A stretch of 63,585 nucleotides of DNA, filler included, from Octopus bimaculoides (lineage: Eukaryota): the NCBI RefSeq assembly GCF_001194135.2. It is 9 parts of 9 records of this genome, joined end to end, with 100 filler letters (N's around TTAATTAATTAA, not from the genome) between each part and the next. Parts side by side here need not be neighbours in the genome. Positions count along the whole stretch, not along the records: positions 40,818 to 48,064 come from NC_068995.1; 8 more parts are not named here. One strand, given 5' to 3'. Position numbers and translations under genes: made by a program. Under the pieces are notes generated by a model, which saw only the letters and a program-made list of their open reading frames with translations, had not been told where the DNA came from and made no database searches. Shown piece by piece: positions 40,718 through 48,184 of this stretch (position 1 is its first letter; each line of letters opens with the position of its first letter).

Positions 40718-40896
40718 NNNNNNNNNNNNNNNNNNNNNNNNNNNNNNNNNNNNNNNNNNNNTTAATTAATTAANNNNNNNNNNNNNNNNNNNNNNNNNNN
40801 NNNNNNNNNNNNNNNNNTATATATATATATATATATATCCCTATCTGAACTGAGATAGGGTTAATACGGTTCTCATTATTTGATTTTTTATTAAAG

Positions 40897-41105
40897 GGGT
40901 GAGCTGGTAGAATCGTTAACGCGCCGGGCGAAATGATTAGCAGCATTTCGTCCGTCTCTGCGTTCTGAGTTCAAATTCTGCCGAGGTCGACTTTACTTTT
41001 TATCCTTTCGGGGTCGATAAATTAAGTACCAATTAAGCGCTGGGATCGATGTAAGCGATGCGCCCCCCCCCTAATTTCAGGTGTTGCACCTGTAGTGGAG
41101 AGGAT
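40897..41105 (+). mobile_element. SINE family B
   Basis: Head, B-box region and conserved block align to other copies. Confidence 0.9.
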
Positions 41106-41171
41106 CGTCACCTCACAAATTGGTGTCTGTCCATGTGAGGTCCCCTTCAATAATGCCCCAATGGCTAATTT

Positions 41172-41523
41172 TATTATTACACTATTATTGTTTTCAGTCC
41201 TGTTTGTTTCTTTGTTTGTCCGTAGACAAGATATCTCAAGAACCGCTGGATGGATCCAGATGAAACTTTCAGGGATGTTTGGCATCGTGACTGGTACGAA
41301 CTGATGAGATTTTGAGATCGATCCGATACCGGACAAGGATTCTGGATTATTTTTTCTGTTTTTTTACTTTATTTTTTAGAGCGGTCAAGTTCATTTTTAG
41401 TATTCTTGTTTGTGAGAGCATTCGAGTTTATTTCAGATATTCTCATTTTAAAAATCATCTCCGTCTAACCGTTGAGAGGACATTGGTGCTGTCTTGGCGG
41501 AGGTATGGACTCCCTGAGCGCTC

Positions 41524-41525
<2 letters not shown>
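41172..41525 (+). mobile_element. Non-autonomous Helentron-associated (HINE/DINE-1-like) element
   Basis: Has the (TGTT)n-like tract followed by gatatctcaagaaccgctggatggatc...tgaaactttcaggg, and the 3' end CTTGGCGGAGGT...GACTCCCTGAGCGCTCT before a T-rich tail. Layout recalled from HINE-type elements; the 5' subterminal repeat is degenerate. Confidence 0.55.
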
Positions 41526-41590
<65 letters not shown>

Positions 41591-41842
41591 TACTATTACG
41601 GAATTTGAACTCTGAACATGAAGACGGACGAAATGCCGCTAAGCATATTGTCCGGCGTGCTAACGATTCAGCCAGCTCGCCGCCTTATGTATGTTTTATT
41701 AAAAGCCCTCACTATTCACCAATCAGGTCCCTGTATAGGTCCAAAATCCGCGCTGGTTTGGTGATTTTACTTTGAGAAATATATAAGATCTGAGTTCACG
41801 AACGATAGAGCGAGGGTGACCCCCGCATCCATATCCACCAGC

Positions 41843-42035
41843 CAGTGGTGTTTTAAGGGTATGGACAGACTGGACAATGGCCCCGGTGAGGTGGGGTGAG
41901 AGAGAAGAACCAAGGGTTTAGGGGTACAATTACCTGCCTTATGTATGTCTTTGCTTTGCTGTCAGTAAACAAATACGGCAGGGCCCCAGTGCACTGCTTT
42001 CAATGGGAGCCTTTAAAGCAGTTAAGACAGCCCTC
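41843..42035. mobile_element. Possible hAT-type MITE
   Basis: Starts CAGTGGTGTTTTAAG and ends GTTAAGACAGCCCTC (about 10/15 complementary); internal gggccccagtgcactgcttt. No TSD seen. Confidence 0.35.
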
Positions 42036-43627
42036 ACCCCGAACCCGACCCTGCGCGCCCCTATTTTGATAGCAGGATAGATATCAAGTGTTCCTTTGAC
42101 ACATATACATGGATATATATATANNNNNNNNNNNNNNNNNNNNNNNNNNNNNNNNNNNNNNNNNNNNNNNNNNNNNNNNNNNNNNNNNNNNNNNNNNNNN
42201 NNNNNNNNNNNNNNNNNNNNNNNNNNNNNNNNNNNNNNNNNNNNNNNNNNNNNNNNNNNNNNNNNNNNNNNNNNNNNNNNNNNNNNNNNNNNNNNNNNNN
42301 NNNNNNNNNNNNNNNNNNNNNNNNNNNNNNNNNNNNNNNNNNNNNNNNNNNNNNNNNNNNNNNNNNNNNNNNNNNNNNNNNNNNNNNNNNNNNNNNNNNN
42401 NNNNNNNNNNNNNNNNNNNNNNNNNNNNNNNNNNNNNNNNNNNNNNNNNNNNNNNNNNNNNNNNNNNNNNNNNNNNNNNNNNNNNNNNNNNNNNNNNNNN
42501 NNNNNNNNNNNNNNNNNNNNNNNNNNNNNNNNNNNNNNNNNNNNNNNNNNNTATATATATATATATATATATGTCCTGGCAGTATAGACTGGCTTATCAG
42601 GAACAACAAGTGTTTGTAGACTAAGGTAGTAAATGTTTGCTGAGAAGTTCAACTATAGGGCCCTGATTATACACACGTACACACAAAACATATACATACA
42701 TAAACACACACACTGGGGCATACACATACACACAAGTATAACCTGGCTAGTTTGGTGGCTGGTTGGTGGGTAGGTGGGTGGACGTTTAGGTCTGGGTGAG
42801 CAAATGGTTAGGTGGTGGGGTGTGTAGTTTGTGAGGGTTCAATCTGGAATATTCAGGGTGGAATGTATTGAAACGGGTGGTATTCCGAATGGTGGACACT
42901 TCATTATTGAGCGGAATAATTCATAACCTGTTAGAATGAAGTCTGAGGTCGGATGGCAAATATCAAACAGAGAGAGGGAGAGAGATTGACACATGTATAT
43001 ACGCATACGTGTATAAATATATACAGGTATGCATTTGTCTTATATTATGTATGTATGCGTCTGTGTATGTGAGTATGTCTGAATAAATAAATATTCATAA
43101 CTGTGTGCCTGCGAGTCCGTGTGCACGTCAATCTGTGGGGGAGGACTGAATGCATGTCGGTGCGCATATATGCATTATGTATGTATGTATATATTATGTA
43201 TATATGTGTAAATATATGCGTGTATATCTATATAAGTATATACATGTATGTAAATGTATATATATACGTATATATGTATGTATATATATAAATATATACA
43301 TATATATATATATAAACATATATATGTATATATGCACGCACACATATATACATAAATATGTATATACATATACATAATATATGCATATATATATATAATG
43401 CATAGTTGCGCACACACATTTATGTAGGTGTGTATTTGTATGTAAGTGGGTGTGTGTGTGCGCGCGTGTGGGTGTGTGCCTGCGCGCGGTTGTAGGAGTT
43501 TTGGGGAAGTGATCAACTTCCTTCAGAATCTCTATAGTCCAGTTACTATAGCAACTGTAATGGTGACATTTATCAGGTCAAGTTGCAATGACCTGGACAT
43601 TTGACCTCTCACCTTCCCACCACTTCC

Positions 43628-43695
<68 letters not shown>

Positions 43696-44469
43696 CCCTC
43701 GTGAAAACGCCCTAAATTTTACTCGTGTATTTACTTTCATTCCTCAAATGTCGGTGGGGCATGAACATCACATACTCTCACATTTTGCTCTCTCTTACCC
43801 CTCCCCCCGTAGATATTAAGTCCGTATTCCTATATAGAACGACACTTGTAAGTCTAGCCTTTGCTCGTCTTGTATCTTTACATCAGTCATGGGCAAGCTG
43901 TGGCCCGCGAGACGTTCGGAATGGCACGTACTGAAAAATTACCTTTAATTTTCTGAGTAGTGTGGTCTGCCTGATGATGTGCCATGTCTTATGCAGCCCA
44001 CTTCTCGACAAAGGTTATTCATGCATGGCTTATATGCTCGCTCCTTCTGCAAGAAGCAACGAACAAACTTCCCTCAAATCACATTACACCGTCTTAAAAA
44101 TGGAAAGGACACGGTAATGTTGTGCTGGGGATTTTCGAGAGAAAAGAAAACGGCGTAGTGTACCAAGTTATAATAAAAGGACAACTGGAACGGAGCTAAT
44201 CTGAAACAGAACAACAACGACGACGATGATGACGACAACAACAACAACAAAAACAACAGGGGACCCTTGTACGGTCGTCTGACTTTGTTAGAAATAGCAA
44301 CCAAAGTCTCTTGAAGATACACCATACACTCTTCAAATAGAAGGAATACATTGGATAGTCTAGTCCTAAATGCGTAACATGCGAGAGATGAGCAAAATGG
44401 TCGTAGCTGAAATGCCTTATACGTCTGTTTCAGCAAGGCTGACCTAGAGCTAAACTACGGCAATAATAA

Positions 44470-44700
44470 TGGTTTCTCTTTGAATAAAAGGACAGTAGTT
44501 TTGAGGGGAGGGAGCAGGTTGACACCATCAACTCCATTATTCGATTGGTACTTTATTTTTACCAACCACGAAAGGATGAAAGGCAAAGTAGATCCCGTTA
44601 GAATTCGAACACAGAACGTAGACAGCCGGAAGAAACCTCTAAGCCAGCTCACCGCCATTAATAATGTTTCAAACTTTGGTACAAAGCCAGCAAATTTAGG
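44470..44700 (-). mobile_element. SINE family B, diverged
   Basis: Reverse complement of the family B body. Confidence 0.8.
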
Positions 44701-44886
44701 GGGACACAGCTAGAACACCTTTGATCTACTCGATCGGGGTTGGCCTGGGGTTAAACAACAGCCACAACAAAACTTCGATAATTTCTCGTGTTTAATTAAA
44801 GTTGTTTTATGAACGCGAGGAACTTCACGGGAATTTGAACCTCTGTGTTGTTTCTGAGAGTTCCTGTAGATTCTTCATTTATACTC

Positions 44887-44997
44887 CCACCAGGTGTCGC
44901 CAAACTTCATTAACCAAACCACCAGATGTCGCCCTATAAACAGCATTATGCTGCAAGGTGTCGCCCTAAAGACAGTCAAATGCCACCGGGTGTCAGC
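44887..44997 (+). promoter_or_regulatory. Array of four CTCF-like 15-mers at an exact 32-bp period
   Basis: CCACCAGGTGTCGCC (44887), CCACCAGATGTCGCC (44919), CTGCAAGGTGTCGCC (44951), CCACCGGGTGTCAGC (44983), each separated by 17 nt. The array is certain; CTCF binding is inferred. Confidence 0.5.
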
Positions 44998-45477
44998 GTT
45001 AATATGAAGAAAATCTCTGTCTCTCTGCTGTCGCCATCATTCGTATTTGTGATGCACCCTGTACATGGGTGGCGTCGGGCACTTAAGAACTGTTGCACAC
45101 TGTTTAATATCAAAGGGTCAGATATGGATGGGGTGAGAAAAGGAAGGTGAGATTCTGATTCACAAATAAAGATTGTGTTGTGTGTGTGTGTAATACATAC
45201 ACACAGACATACATATGCATACATACAGCTGGACATATATATGTATATACTTATATATGTATACACACACACCCACATATATAAGCATGTATATGCACAT
45301 ACATGTATACATATATTTATTTATATATACACATGCACATAGATGTTATTTTAGAAATAACATAAGGTATACATGCCTGTGGAGAGCATGGTGTCAGTAT
45401 GTGAGTGAGTGTGTGAGTATATATATATATATATATATATACATACATACATACATACATACATACATACAGATATG

Positions 45478-45511
<34 letters not shown>

Positions 45512-45543
45512 TATACATACATACAGATATATGCACGGATATA

Positions 45544-45581
<38 letters not shown>

Positions 45582-45866
45582 CATATATGGAAAAAAGAGT
45601 ACTCAAATACCAGAGGTAGAGTAATATGCTTTATTTAAAAGCAGCAGAAATATACCAAAAGCTGTTACTCAGAGTTTCACGTTCCCATTCGTCTGACAAC
45701 TGTCCGANNNNNNNNNNNNNNNNNNNNNNNNNNNNNNNNNNNNNNNNNNNNNNNNNNNNNNNNNNNNNNNNNNNNNNNNNNNNNNNNNNNNNNNNNNNNN
45801 NNNNNNNNNNNNNNNNNNNNNNNNNNNNNNNNCATATACATACATACAGATATATGCACGGATATA

Positions 45867-45904
<38 letters not shown>

Positions 45905-45956
45905 CATATATGGAAAAAAGAGTACTCAAATACCAGAGGTAGAGTAATATGCTTTA

Positions 45957-46087
45957 TTTAAAAGCAGCAGAAATATACCAAAAGCTGTTACTCAGAGTTT
46001 CACGTTCCCATTCGTCTGACAACTGTCCGAAAACGGAAACATGAAACTCTGAGTAACAGCTTTTGTTATATTTCTGCTGCTTTTAAA
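45957..46087. repeat. 131-bp imperfect palindrome of PLE pseudo-LTR-like sequence
   Basis: Left arm TTTAAAAGCAGCAGAAATATACCAAAAGCTGTTACTCAGAGTTTCACGTTCCC; the reverse complement of the right arm differs at 3 of 53 positions. Confidence 0.92.
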
Positions 46088-46205
46088 GGCGGTGCTCCAG
46101 CATGGCTGCAATCAAATGACGGAAACAAATAAAGAATAAAGATATATATATAAAGGAATAAAAGAATATAGTGAAGAAACAAGAATAAACGCCTCAAAAC
46201 CTAAC

Positions 46206-46311
46206 TACACGACGCGTTTCAAAAGTATGGTTATTTTTTTAACAATGCGTAATACATTATATATTACGTAAGTATCCATTATTGCGTAACCATACCATTT
46301 CATCAGGAGAT
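46206..46311 (-). ncRNA. Hammerhead-like motif with canonical core and long stem II
   Basis: Minus strand reads CUC CUGAUGA AAUG GUAUGGUUA ... UAACCAUAC UUUU GAAAC GC GUC GUG. Stem III ACGCGU is palindromic; stem I is weak. Confidence 0.5.
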
Positions 46312-46559
46312 ATTCAACCTTCAATCGACGAAATACACTTAATGTATTTATAGATTGATTGATTGATTGATCGATTGATTGATTGATTGATTTCAGCCCG
46401 TTGACATAAAATTATACCGCTCACTGCATACTTGATCCACACGTGCATTTCGGATTTCAGCCCGTCATCCTGTTGTCTCGGTCATCCGTTCTCTACATTC
46501 AAGAGATAATAGAATGAATGCGATGCCAGCAATCTACTAATTTAGACTTTAAATATGTC

Positions 46560-47068
46560 CGTTTTTTCTTCGCCAACCAGTCAATATTTTTGAATGTTGA
46601 CTTAATGATTTCTCTGTCACTACTTCGGAATGTACGGACGTAAACATACCAACACCGGTGGTCATGCGATAATGGGAAGACAGAGACACAAACATACACG
46701 TACCCACGCGCACCCACACACGTATATACACACACACATACATACACGCACACATACACGCACACATACATACATACATACATACATACACACACATACA
46801 CACATACACACATATACATACATACACACATGCATACATAATGGATACACACACACGCATACATACATACAATACCATACATACATACATACTATACCAT
46901 ACATACATACACACATACAGACAGGCTTCTTTCAATTTCCATCTACCAAATCCAGTCACAAAGCTTTCGTTGGCCCGAAGCTATAACAGAAGACACTTGC
47001 CTAAGGCGCCACGCAGTGGGACTGAACCCGGAACTCAGCGGTTCAAAAGCAAACCGCGTCTGCGCCTA
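46560..47068 (-). mobile_element. SINE family A with an expanded central microsatellite
   Basis: Head reverse complement at 46920-47068; tail remnants at 46560-46700. Confidence 0.82.
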
Positions 47069-47799
47069 GTGTATATAACTTATTTGTATAAACATTTTAA
47101 TTGTACATGTAATGTATAAGTGTATATAATATTTCGGAATACATCCATTTAGCTGTGCGGGACTCCCATCCACCCCTCCCACTACCCTTCCACCCCACTC
47201 ACCCTGGTTTCTGCTGCTGTCTTTGATTCTGCAGATGTTCAGGCTGGGATCGGTTTCAGTCTGGGGGGGGGGGCAGAGAAGCTGCCTACATATCACACTG
47301 GTACCACCCCTCCTTCTCCTCACTAATTTACATAATTTATTAATGCTTAAAATTATATGATATAGATGTGTGCATAATGTTTAGAGTTTACCGTATCAAG
47401 TATGCTAACCCCGATGTGTCTATGTGTATATATGTGTGTGTGTGCGATGTGTTTGTGCATGTGTGTGTGTGTGCGTGTGTGTGTGTATACTATTTACGTG
47501 TAATAATATATTTATCTGTATAATTTATTAGTATATATAATTGATATGTTTATATAATTTAGCTGTGTGTATATTTTAGTTGTATATATAATTCTCTTCT
47601 GGATGCGACTTAGTTACACACACACACATGCACACACATTCACACATACATACACACACGCACACATACAGACGCTCGCACAGATACATACAGATGTATA
47701 TGCGTGTGTGTGTGTGTGTGTCTGGCAGAGCCTACAGATAACTTTAGGAATGTAAGCTAGACACCCCCCCCCCGAACTGGACGCCAGTTACTATCATGA

Positions 47800-48040
47800 A
47801 AAGCACTACGCGTCCCTCGTAGATTTCGGAAATTAGGGCCCAATGATAAGATATCGTAGTGTGCAAGGACCTACAGTTTTTCAATGCTTTGCCCTCAAAT
47901 TTAAGCGATCTTCAAGGTGCTGATATGCGTATTTCAAAAAAGGGACAAACGTCTCTTCATCTGGGGTCCCAGACTAACTTATGTAGCGGCAAGAAACACA
48001 AATCAGGGCAACGATATCCGACTCCCTCATTTCACGAAAA
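47800..48040 (+). mobile_element. Decayed CR1-like LINE 3' end
   Basis: Frameshifted QGP.LFNALPSNLSDLQG...FKK...GVPD resembles CR1 ORF2 C-termini. Confidence 0.5.
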
Positions 48041-48184
48041 ACTAGATAGGGCTGTGGAAATACANNNNNNNNNNNNNNNNNNNNNNNNNNNNNNNNNNNN
48101 NNNNNNNNTTAATTAATTAANNNNNNNNNNNNNNNNNNNNNNNNNNNNNNNNNNNNNNNNNNNNTATATATATATATATATATA

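What the first reader, a model, noticed from the sequence alone, without database searches (positions are those of the whole stretch)
44887..45035. Four CTCF-like motifs phased at exactly 32 bp with diverged spacers
Seen: 15-mers at 44887, 44919, 44951 and 44983 (CCACCAGGTGTCGCC, CCACCAGATGTCGCC, CTGCAAGGTGTCGCC, CCACCGGGTGTCAGC), all in the same orientation. The 17-nt spacers are AAACTTCATTAACCAAA, CTATAAACAGCATTATG and CTAAAGACAGTCAAATG; spacers 2 and 3 share about 11/17 and spacer 1 is unrelated. A further TGTCGCC lies at 45029, off phase. Motif and spacer length are kept while spacer sequence drifts. Known: the CTCF core is CCRSYAGRKGGCRS, so these differ mainly by T for G in GGCGC, and 32 bp is about three helical turns. 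Inference: an old tandem duplication under selection as a helically phased homotypic zinc-finger binding array (insulator or loop anchor), or a site for another C2H2 protein. This is the strongest unexplained signal in the window.
Basis: partly seen in the sequence, partly recalled or inferred. Interest (0 to 1): 0.72.

Follow-up and report, generated by a model that had tools for sequence, protein, structure and literature searches.

The report
Phased CTCF-like motif array, function untested
A 166-base stretch of repeat-rich animal (apparently cephalopod) DNA holds five head-to-tail 32-base units. A 15-base GC-rich core resembling a CTCF site is kept in them while the linkers have drifted, so it looks like an old protein-binding array, but neither binding nor genomic copy number could be tested here.

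Summary
CCACCAGGTGTCGCC and three variants start at 44887, 44919, 44951 and 44983, exactly 32 bp apart on one strand (4 matches against 0.02 expected by chance). A fifth, decayed unit lies at 45021-45035, six bases out of phase.

Conserved columns cluster in the 15-bp core: 77% pairwise identity against 32% in the linkers (permutation p about 5e-5). The array is therefore not a uniformly decaying minisatellite.

The core fits the published CTCF consensus CCASYAGRKGGCRS at 13/14 positions in units 1 and 2. With the vertebrate CTCF matrix, recalled from memory, units 1, 2 and 4 are the three best hits in the 7.2-kb piece (p 1e-7 to 3e-6). All copies carry T where CTCF sites nearly always have G, and units 3 and 5 are poor sites.

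No structured RNA, coding remnant or inverted partner array was found. No collection on hand holds cephalopod DNA. Copy number (the mobile-element rival), orthologue conservation and binding therefore stay untested.

Best reading: a relic tandem array of sites for a multi-zinc-finger protein of CTCF-type specificity, whose carrier (this locus or a mobile element) is unknown. Interest is modest.

The parts
44870..44901 (+). Unit 1: linker attcttcatttatactc plus core M1 CCACCAGGTGTCGCC (44887-44901)
   Evidence: CTCF matrix score 19.7 bits, p = 1.4e-7 (matrix recalled from memory). Fits the published consensus at 13/14.
44902..44933 (+). Unit 2: linker aaacttcattaaccaaa plus core M2 CCACCAGATGTCGCC (44919-44933)
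   Evidence: Core matches M1 at 14/15; linker matches the unit 1 linker at 9/17. Matrix p = 7.4e-7.
44934..44965 (+). Unit 3: linker ctataaacagcattatg plus core M3 CTGCAAGGTGTCGCC (44951-44965), partly decayed
   Evidence: Core matches M1 at 12/15. Matrix p = 2e-4. Fits the consensus at 10/14.
44966..44997 (+). Unit 4: linker ctaaagacagtcaaatg plus core M4 CCACCGGGTGTCAGC (44983-44997)
   Evidence: Linker matches the unit 3 linker at 11/17; core matches M3 at 9/15 and M1 at 12/15. Matrix p = 2.9e-6.
44998..45035 (+). Unit 5, degenerate: 23-nt linker (6 nt too long) plus core CTCTCTGCTGTCGCC (45021-45035)
   Evidence: Core matches the consensus core at 10/15, p about 0.017 after allowing 21 offsets. 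The matrix score is negative.
44658..45175 (.). Non-repetitive host sequence holding the array. It is bounded on the left by a SINE and on the right by (TG)n/(ATAC)n microsatellites.
   Evidence: No second copy exists anywhere in the 7.2-kb piece. No Pfam remnant in any of six frames. No Rfam or tRNA hit over it.
44473..44657 (-). tRNA-like SINE copy inserted into the host sequence (context, not part of the array)
   Evidence: It aligns to the copies at about 40890-41075 (+) and 41598-41700 (-). Flanking target-site duplication: 44458-44474 against 44653-44669 (D6).

Best explanation
The block is a short tandem array made by duplication of single 32-bp units: four in exact phase and a fifth with six extra bases. 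Within it a 15-bp GC-rich core has been held, at some stage of its history, by selection for binding of a sequence-specific protein, while the AT-rich 17-bp linkers were free to change.

A 15-bp core is the length read by five C2H2 zinc fingers. Its sequence is of the CTCF type, and CTCF is the best named candidate. A lineage-specific zinc-finger protein that prefers T at the eleventh core position is the alternative.

Units 1 and 2, and less so unit 4, are still good sites. Units 3 and 5 are decayed. The array today looks like a partly eroded relic rather than a tuned four-site device.

Shown: the array, its phase, the clustering of conserved columns, and the match to the CTCF consensus.
Inferred: protein binding, the identity of the protein, and any effect on chromatin.
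Unresolved: whether selection acted at this locus or in a mobile element that brought the array here.
For: - Four in-phase matches against 0.02 expected; the three-in-phase pattern gave 0 of 100 shuffles.
- Conserved columns are clustered: core 77% against linker 32% pairwise identity, and 1 of 20000 column permutations reaches the observed 15-column block.
- Between the two unit pairs the cores keep 11-12/15 identity while the linkers fall to chance (2-4/17).
- Within pair 1/2 the core is 14/15 against a linker of 9/17.
- The piece is AT-rich (background GC about 39%). A GC-rich core would be expected to erode faster under neutral drift, not slower (inference).
- The core fits CCASYAGRKGGCRS at 13/14 in M1 and M2 (consensus from PMC6746451).
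- M1, M2 and M4 are the three best CTCF-matrix hits on both strands of the 7.2-kb piece, p = 1.4e-7, 7.4e-7 and 2.9e-6. The next independent hit is p = 2e-4.
- CTCF is present in cephalopods and CTCF-like motifs are enriched at their domain boundaries and loop anchors (PMC9023564; PMC13652810).
- No RNA structure signal on either strand, z = 0.1 and 0.5, and no coding remnant. A DNA-level role is what is left.
Against: - T replaces the near-invariant G of GGC in every copy. In the recalled matrix T is seen at that position in about 8% of sites, and the swap costs about 4 bits.
- Units 3 and 4 differ from each other as much in the core (9/15) as in the linker (11/17), which looks neutral since their duplication.
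- The core/linker partition was chosen after seeing the data. The permutation test corrects for window position but not for having picked this array.
- The matrix is vertebrate and was recalled from memory. No cephalopod CTCF binding data exist in the papers read.
- In echinoderms CTCF motifs do not behave as in vertebrates (PMC13317027).
- A 32-bp period is shorter than the roughly 40-50 bp footprint usually quoted for full-length CTCF (own knowledge), so neighbouring sites may compete rather than cooperate.
- No relatives of the array were found anywhere, so there is no comparative support.
Confidence: 0.45

Rival explanations
1. The array is an internal module of a multicopy mobile element, for example enhancer repeats of an LTR or 5' UTR, or subterminal transposase-binding repeats. 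The core/linker pattern was shaped in the element's master copies. This copy is a dead insertion with no host function.
For: - The piece is dominated by interspersed repeats and microsatellites: four SINE copies in 7.2 kb.
- Arrays of short conserved binding cores with free spacers are typical of such modules (established knowledge: the gypsy Su(Hw) array, subterminal repeats of hAT, CACTA and Mutator elements).
- AATAAA at 45165 is followed by a GT-rich run and a microsatellite, which could be a retroelement 3' end.
- Partial decay of units 3-5 fits a neutral insertion.
Against: - There is no inverted partner array on either strand within 4 kb upstream or 3 kb downstream.
- No second copy of 44660-45175 exists in the piece.
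- No reverse transcriptase, transposase or other domain remnant in six frames of 43700-45175.
- The host sequence predates an old SINE insertion (target-site duplication).
- None of this excludes a truncated or non-autonomous element. Copy number could not be measured.
Confidence: 0.3
2. It is a neutrally decaying minisatellite. A 32-mer was duplicated a few times, and the apparent core is a product of history (two duplication rounds) and chance, with no binding function at any time.
For: - The exact phase follows trivially from tandem duplication.
- Pair 3/4 shows no core-specific conservation (core 9/15 against linker 11/17).
- The fifth unit has slipped by 6 nt and decayed.
- A shifted match between linkers 1 and 2 (AAACnnCATTA at offset 4, p = 0.04 uncorrected) hints that all linkers may be homologous after indels.
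Against: - The clustering of conserved columns is very unlikely under uniform decay (1 of 20000 permutations).
- Cores stay at 11-12/15 between pairs whose linkers are at chance level.
- The GC-rich part survives in an AT-rich background.
- The conserved block coincides in length and sequence with a known 15-bp zinc-finger core at p about 1e-7.
Confidence: 0.22
3. One reading: the array is a working, helically phased CTCF insulator or loop anchor at this locus.
For: - Three of the four cores pass usual CTCF motif thresholds, all in one orientation.
- CTCF-like motifs are reported as enriched at cephalopod domain boundaries and loop anchors.
- The 32-bp period is close to three helical turns, and to the 33 bp that eleven zinc fingers would span (inference).
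Against: - There are no binding, accessibility or contact data.
- T sits at the key G position in all copies.
- Two of five units are decayed.
- There is no convergent partner site in the piece.
- Loop extrusion by CTCF is not demonstrated in any spiralian (PMC10658181).
- The close spacing would make neighbouring full-length CTCF molecules clash (own knowledge).
Confidence: 0.1
4. The core is a site for a different factor. Its invariant part, G[GA]TGTC, overlaps a T-box half-site (AGGTGT) and, in units 1 and 2, an E-box (CAGGTG, CAGATG) of the kind bound by bHLH, Snail or ZEB proteins.
For: - Columns 7 and 9-12 of the core are invariant, G at column 7 and TGTC at 9-12, and column 8 is G or A, giving G[GA]TGTC.
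- CACCAGGTG in M1 and CACCGGGTG in M4 are near-palindromes (read directly from the sequence).
- The conserved T argues for a factor that prefers T at that position.
Against: - The E-box is present in only 2 of 4 units.
- The T-box half-site lacks its usual GA continuation (motifs recalled from memory, not tested).
- The conserved block is 15 bp, longer than these 6-8 bp sites.
Confidence: 0.12

Closest known systems
Vertebrate/bilaterian CTCF core site (CCASYAGRKGGCRS; JASPAR MA0139.1)
   Same: The 15-bp core aligns position for position. M1 and M2 fit at 13/14. The matrix p-values of 1e-7 to 3e-6 are the best in the piece.
   Different: T stands for the near-invariant G of GGC in every copy. 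No upstream CTCF module was seen. Binding is untested. The matrix is vertebrate and was recalled from memory.
Su(Hw) binding-site array of the Drosophila gypsy retrotransposon insulator (12 zinc-finger sites within about 350 bp, separated by AT-rich spacers; established knowledge)
   Same: It is a direct array of short conserved zinc-finger-type cores with AT-rich, non-conserved spacers of about 15-20 bp, all in one orientation. It is the best analogue for how the octopus array would work.
   Different: The motif and protein are different. Here there are only 4-5 sites. Carriage by a mobile element is not shown. No insulator assay has been done.
Clustered or repeated CTCF sites at vertebrate boundaries and imprinting control regions (H19/Igf2 ICR repeats; consensus quoted in PMC6746451), and SINE-borne CTCF sites in mouse
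   Same: These are several same-type CTCF sites created by duplication or repeat expansion.
   Different: Known clusters are spaced by tens to thousands of bp without strict phase. Here the period is an exact 32 bp, shorter than a full CTCF footprint.
Subterminal transposase-binding repeats of DNA transposons (hAT, CACTA, Mutator, IR-DR Tc1 elements; established knowledge)
   Same: These also have short conserved cores repeated at short intervals, with free spacers.
   Different: No terminal inverted repeat, no inverted partner array and no transposase remnant lie within the piece.

Membership tests
CTCF binding site | Match to the core consensus or matrix at usual thresholds (p < 1e-5) | tested here: met
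   M1 p = 1.4e-7, M2 p = 7.4e-7 and M4 p = 2.9e-6 are met. M3 (p = 2e-4) and unit 5 are not (matrix recalled from memory). Fit to the published CCASYAGRKGGCRS: M1 13/14, M2 13/14, M4 12/14, M3 10/14.
CTCF binding site | G-G-C triplet of the core (positions 10-12 of the 14-mer) | tested here: not met
   All five copies read G-T-C. In the recalled matrix T occurs there in about 8% of sites.
CTCF binding site | Occupancy by CTCF in vivo or in vitro | not testable with these tools
   The papers read contain no cephalopod CTCF ChIP or CUT&RUN data.
Insulator / loop anchor | Coincidence with a Hi-C boundary or loop anchor and with open chromatin | not testable with these tools
   The genomic position of the piece is unknown. 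No Hi-C or ATAC tracks are on hand.
Selected cis-regulatory element | Lower substitution rate in cores than in linkers across orthologous loci | not testable with these tools
   No cephalopod DNA is in any collection. Only the within-array comparison was possible: core 77% against linker 32%.
Tandem repeat (minisatellite) | Head-to-tail units of constant period and shared descent | tested here: met
   Four units lie at exactly 32 bp. Linkers are homologous within the pairs 1/2 and 3/4. The array is too diverged for Tandem Repeats Finder at score 30.
Internal module of a mobile element | Many copies in the genome | not testable with these tools
   There is no second copy in the 7.2-kb piece. 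The genome is not available.
Internal module of a mobile element | Element hallmarks nearby (inverted partner array, terminal repeats, coding remnants) | tested here: not met
   There are no reverse-strand motif matches and no Pfam hits in six frames of 43700-45175.
Structured RNA gene | Rfam match, or folding energy below that of shuffles | tested here: not met
   No Rfam or tRNA hit overlaps 44870-45035. z = 0.09 on the + strand and 0.50 on the - strand.

The most novel reading that the evidence does not exclude
Cephalopod CTCF, or one of the many lineage-specific octopus zinc-finger proteins, prefers a G-T-C core and is loaded as a head-to-tail tile on 32-bp phased arrays, one protein per three helical turns. 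Such arrays would form a compact boundary element of a kind not described in vertebrates or flies.
Probability: 0.08. Interest if true: 0.6.

Novelty: new member of a known kind. Interest (0 to 1): 0.3.

Why it matters
Cephalopods have large, rearranged genomes with domains and loops. So far only motif enrichment links CTCF to them, and no binding site has been validated in any spiralian. A compact array with two or three near-consensus sites would make a convenient, well-defined probe for a first gel-shift or DAP-seq test of octopus CTCF specificity, including the G/T position.

If the array turns out to be carried by a repeat family, it would be a candidate for repeat-driven spread of architectural-protein sites in octopus, as with SINE B2 in mouse or gypsy in flies. 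If it is single-copy and not conserved, it is an ordinary decaying tandem duplication.

Tried and rejected
- **DNA relatives.** The strict two-core pattern found nothing in viral, metagenome and prokaryotic genome contigs. The loose three-core pattern gave 22 metagenome loci. All are unrelated perfect 16- or 32-bp tandem repeats with other cores. It gave none in viral contigs.
- **Protein route to eukaryotic contigs.**
  - A translation across the array had no word-sharing candidates.
  - Exact look-up of ten window ORFs found none in the collection.
  - A composite of SINE-derived ORFs, meant to fetch cephalopod loci, gave no significant hit.
  - The exhaustive HMMER search with the 78-aa frame gave three hits. 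All are spurious repeat ORFs whose scores add up over repeats. The pairwise E-value is 2.3. The contig behind the best hit has 64% GC and no core motif.
  - The third word-index search was left unused, because these controls show the collections do not hold cephalopod non-coding sequence.
- **Literature string searches.** Searches for the core and for SINE fragments found only unrelated primers, or nothing.
- **Structured RNA, miRNA and tRNA.** Rejected. All Rfam 'miRNA' hits in the piece are microsatellite artefacts.
- **Coding repeat.** Rejected. The period of 32 is not a multiple of 3, and there are stops in most frames.
- **MITE or transposon arm.** There is no inverted partner.
- **13-nt inverted match.** 44695-44707 against 44958-44970 (I20) is about what chance gives in 1 kb (my estimate: 0.3-0.6 expected).
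- **Shifted homology of linkers 1 and 2.** Marginal, p = 0.04 before correction for ten comparisons.

Full report
**What the piece is.** Positions 40818-48064 are AT-rich eukaryotic DNA (GC about 39%). The piece has two assembly gaps (N runs 42125-42551 and 45709-45832) and many microsatellites.

It also carries at least three copies of one tRNA-like SINE family, at about 40890-41075 (+), 41598-41700 (-) and 44473-44657 (-), plus a second SINE-like element at 46935-47060. I could not verify the organism. No long ORF has a Pfam match. ARAGORN finds no tRNA. Every Rfam hit below gathering score sits on a microsatellite or on one long hairpin, and none overlaps the finding.

**The observation.** They are the only matches to CCACCAGGTGTCGCC with up to 3 mismatches on either strand, against 0.02 expected. 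A much looser three-in-phase pattern never occurred in 100 shuffles.

Two details need amending. First, the 17 nt before M1 (44870-44886) are homologous to spacer 1: 9/17, with an exact CTTCATT (D2). Spacers 2 and 3 share 11/17. The array therefore consists of two pairs of units, (1,2) and (3,4). Second, the 'off-phase TGTCGCC' is the end of a fifth, degenerate core at 45021-45035. It matches 10/15 and sits 38 rather than 32 nt after M4. The array spans 44870-45035.

**Is the core really more conserved than the linkers?** Yes. Mean pairwise identity is 77% over the 15 core columns and 32% over the 17 linker columns. Only 1 of 20000 permutations of the columns gives a 15-column block as conserved as the one observed.

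The contrast comes mainly from comparisons between the two pairs: cores 11-12/15, linkers 2-4/17, which is chance level. Pair 1/2 also contributes, with core 14/15 against linker 9/17. Pair 3/4 shows no contrast (core 9/15, linker 11/17). M3 and M4 each differ from the consensus at three positions, about the same per-site divergence as their linkers.

So the data say two things. At a deeper level of the array's history the core was kept while the linkers were replaced. Units 3, 4 and 5 have since drifted about as fast as neutral sequence.

A possible shifted homology between linkers 1 and 2 (AAACnnCATTA, offset 4) is marginal (p = 0.04 uncorrected). If real, it would mean that compensating indels preserved the 17-nt length.

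**What the core resembles.** The published CTCF consensus is CCASYAGRKGGCRS (quoted in PMC6746451). M1 and M2 fit 13 of 14 positions, M4 fits 12 and M3 fits 10. The shared misfit is T for the second G of GGC.

I scored the piece with the vertebrate matrix MA0139.1 as I recall it. The column sums are consistent, but it is a recalled resource and not a curated file. M1, M2 and M4 are the three best hits on both strands of the 7.2-kb piece, at p = 1.4e-7, 7.4e-7 and 2.9e-6. M3 reaches 2e-4, unit 5 scores negatively, and the best hit outside the array is 2e-4. The T costs about 4 bits, and in the recalled counts T occurs there in about 8% of sites.

The conserved block therefore coincides in length and sequence with a CTCF-type five-finger core. 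That is unlikely to be an accident once the block is accepted as conserved. The invariant T leaves open a different zinc-finger protein, or a shifted preference of the cephalopod protein.

The invariant part G[GA]TGTC also overlaps a T-box half-site. In units 1 and 2 it overlaps an E-box. These are shorter than the conserved block and are not present in all units.

**What it is not.**
- It is not a structured RNA: folding energies equal those of shuffles on both strands (z = 0.09 and 0.50).
- It is not coding: the period of 32 is not a multiple of three, there are stops in most frames, and six-frame Pfam scans of 43700-45175 are empty.
- It is not a short inverted-repeat transposon: no reverse-strand core lies within the piece, and no second copy of 44660-45175 exists.

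**Local history.** The SINE at 44473-44657 is flanked by a 14-15-nt target-site duplication (44458-44474 against 44653-44669). The sequence left of it (43700-44470) and the array-bearing sequence right of it were therefore once contiguous, and both predate that insertion.

**The main untested rival.** It could not be tested, because none of the collections holds cephalopod DNA.
- DNA scans with a strict two-core pattern found nothing in viral, metagenome or prokaryotic contigs.
- A loose three-core pattern found only unrelated perfect 16- or 32-bp tandem repeats.
- Protein-level routes failed as well.
- The only 'hits' of the exhaustive search are spurious repeat ORFs with a pairwise E-value of 2.3.

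**Context from the literature.** CTCF and cohesin genes are present in Euprymna, and a CTCF-like motif is enriched at its domain boundaries (PMC9023564). CTCF-like motifs are also detected at loop anchors in three coleoids, among them O. bimaculoides, whose anchors are rich in SINE-derived motifs (PMC13652810).

No direct evidence for loop extrusion or CTCF binding exists for any spiralian (PMC10658181). In echinoderms CTCF motifs show no orientation rule (PMC13317027). The insulator reading is therefore plausible in kind but unsupported for this locus.

**Verdict.** The array is real and non-random. Its most likely nature is a relic tandem array of binding sites for a multi-zinc-finger protein of CTCF-type specificity (confidence about 0.45). 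The carrier, host locus or mobile element, is unknown.
- A pure mobile-element module without host function: about 0.3. This overlaps with the best reading.
- A neutral minisatellite: about 0.22.
- A working CTCF insulator at this locus: about 0.1.

The closest working analogue is the Su(Hw) site array of gypsy. The closest sequence relative is the CTCF core, whose defining G-G-C triplet is not met. I file it as a new member of a known kind, of modest interest until copy number, orthologue conservation and binding are checked.

Noticed in passing
window 45957-46087: A long hairpin: 56-nt arms (45957-46012 and 46032-46087) that are 93% complementary, with a 19-nt loop. It is a candidate MITE or hairpin-RNA precursor. 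The weak Rfam mir-196 and mir-191 hits here only reflect the hairpin.
   Followed up: partly
window 45511-45708 and 45834-46031: The same roughly 200 bp appear on both sides of the N run 45709-45832. This looks like an assembly-gap duplication artefact (I1/I2).
   Followed up: partly
window 40890-41075 (+), 41598-41700 (-), 44473-44657 (-); 46935-47060: There are three diverged copies of one tRNA-like SINE family, about 75-80% alike, and a second SINE-like element. Several abut microsatellite tails, (TTA)n and (ATAC)n. The copy at 44473-44657 has a clear target-site duplication.
   Followed up: partly
window 44834-44849 (- strand): A B-box-like GGTTCAAATTCC lies 40 nt upstream of the array, on the opposite strand. 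It has a 16-nt match to the SINE-like element at 47032-47047. It may be a fragment of a tRNA-derived element next to the array.
   Followed up: no
window 45165-45192: AATAAA is followed directly by a GT-rich run and then a 400-bp (ATAC)n/(TA)n microsatellite, about 130 nt after the array. It could be a polyadenylation signal or retroelement 3' end, or chance in AT-rich DNA.
   Followed up: no
L016 6834-7296 and L020 5232-5385 (metagenome contigs WLWD01002571.1, WLWI01016704.1): Long, perfect 32-bp tandem arrays CACCTGGATGTCACC + ctctcaacaatcacata turned up in the loose pattern scan. They share the period and the G+C-rich core / A+T-rich spacer layout, but the sequence is unrelated.
   Followed up: no
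window 43631-43695 and 43176-43480: A 65-bp perfect (CT)n and a roughly 300-bp (TA)n/(GT)n block lie upstream. Together with the other microsatellites they produce all the sub-threshold Rfam 'miRNA' hits in the piece.
   Followed up: yes
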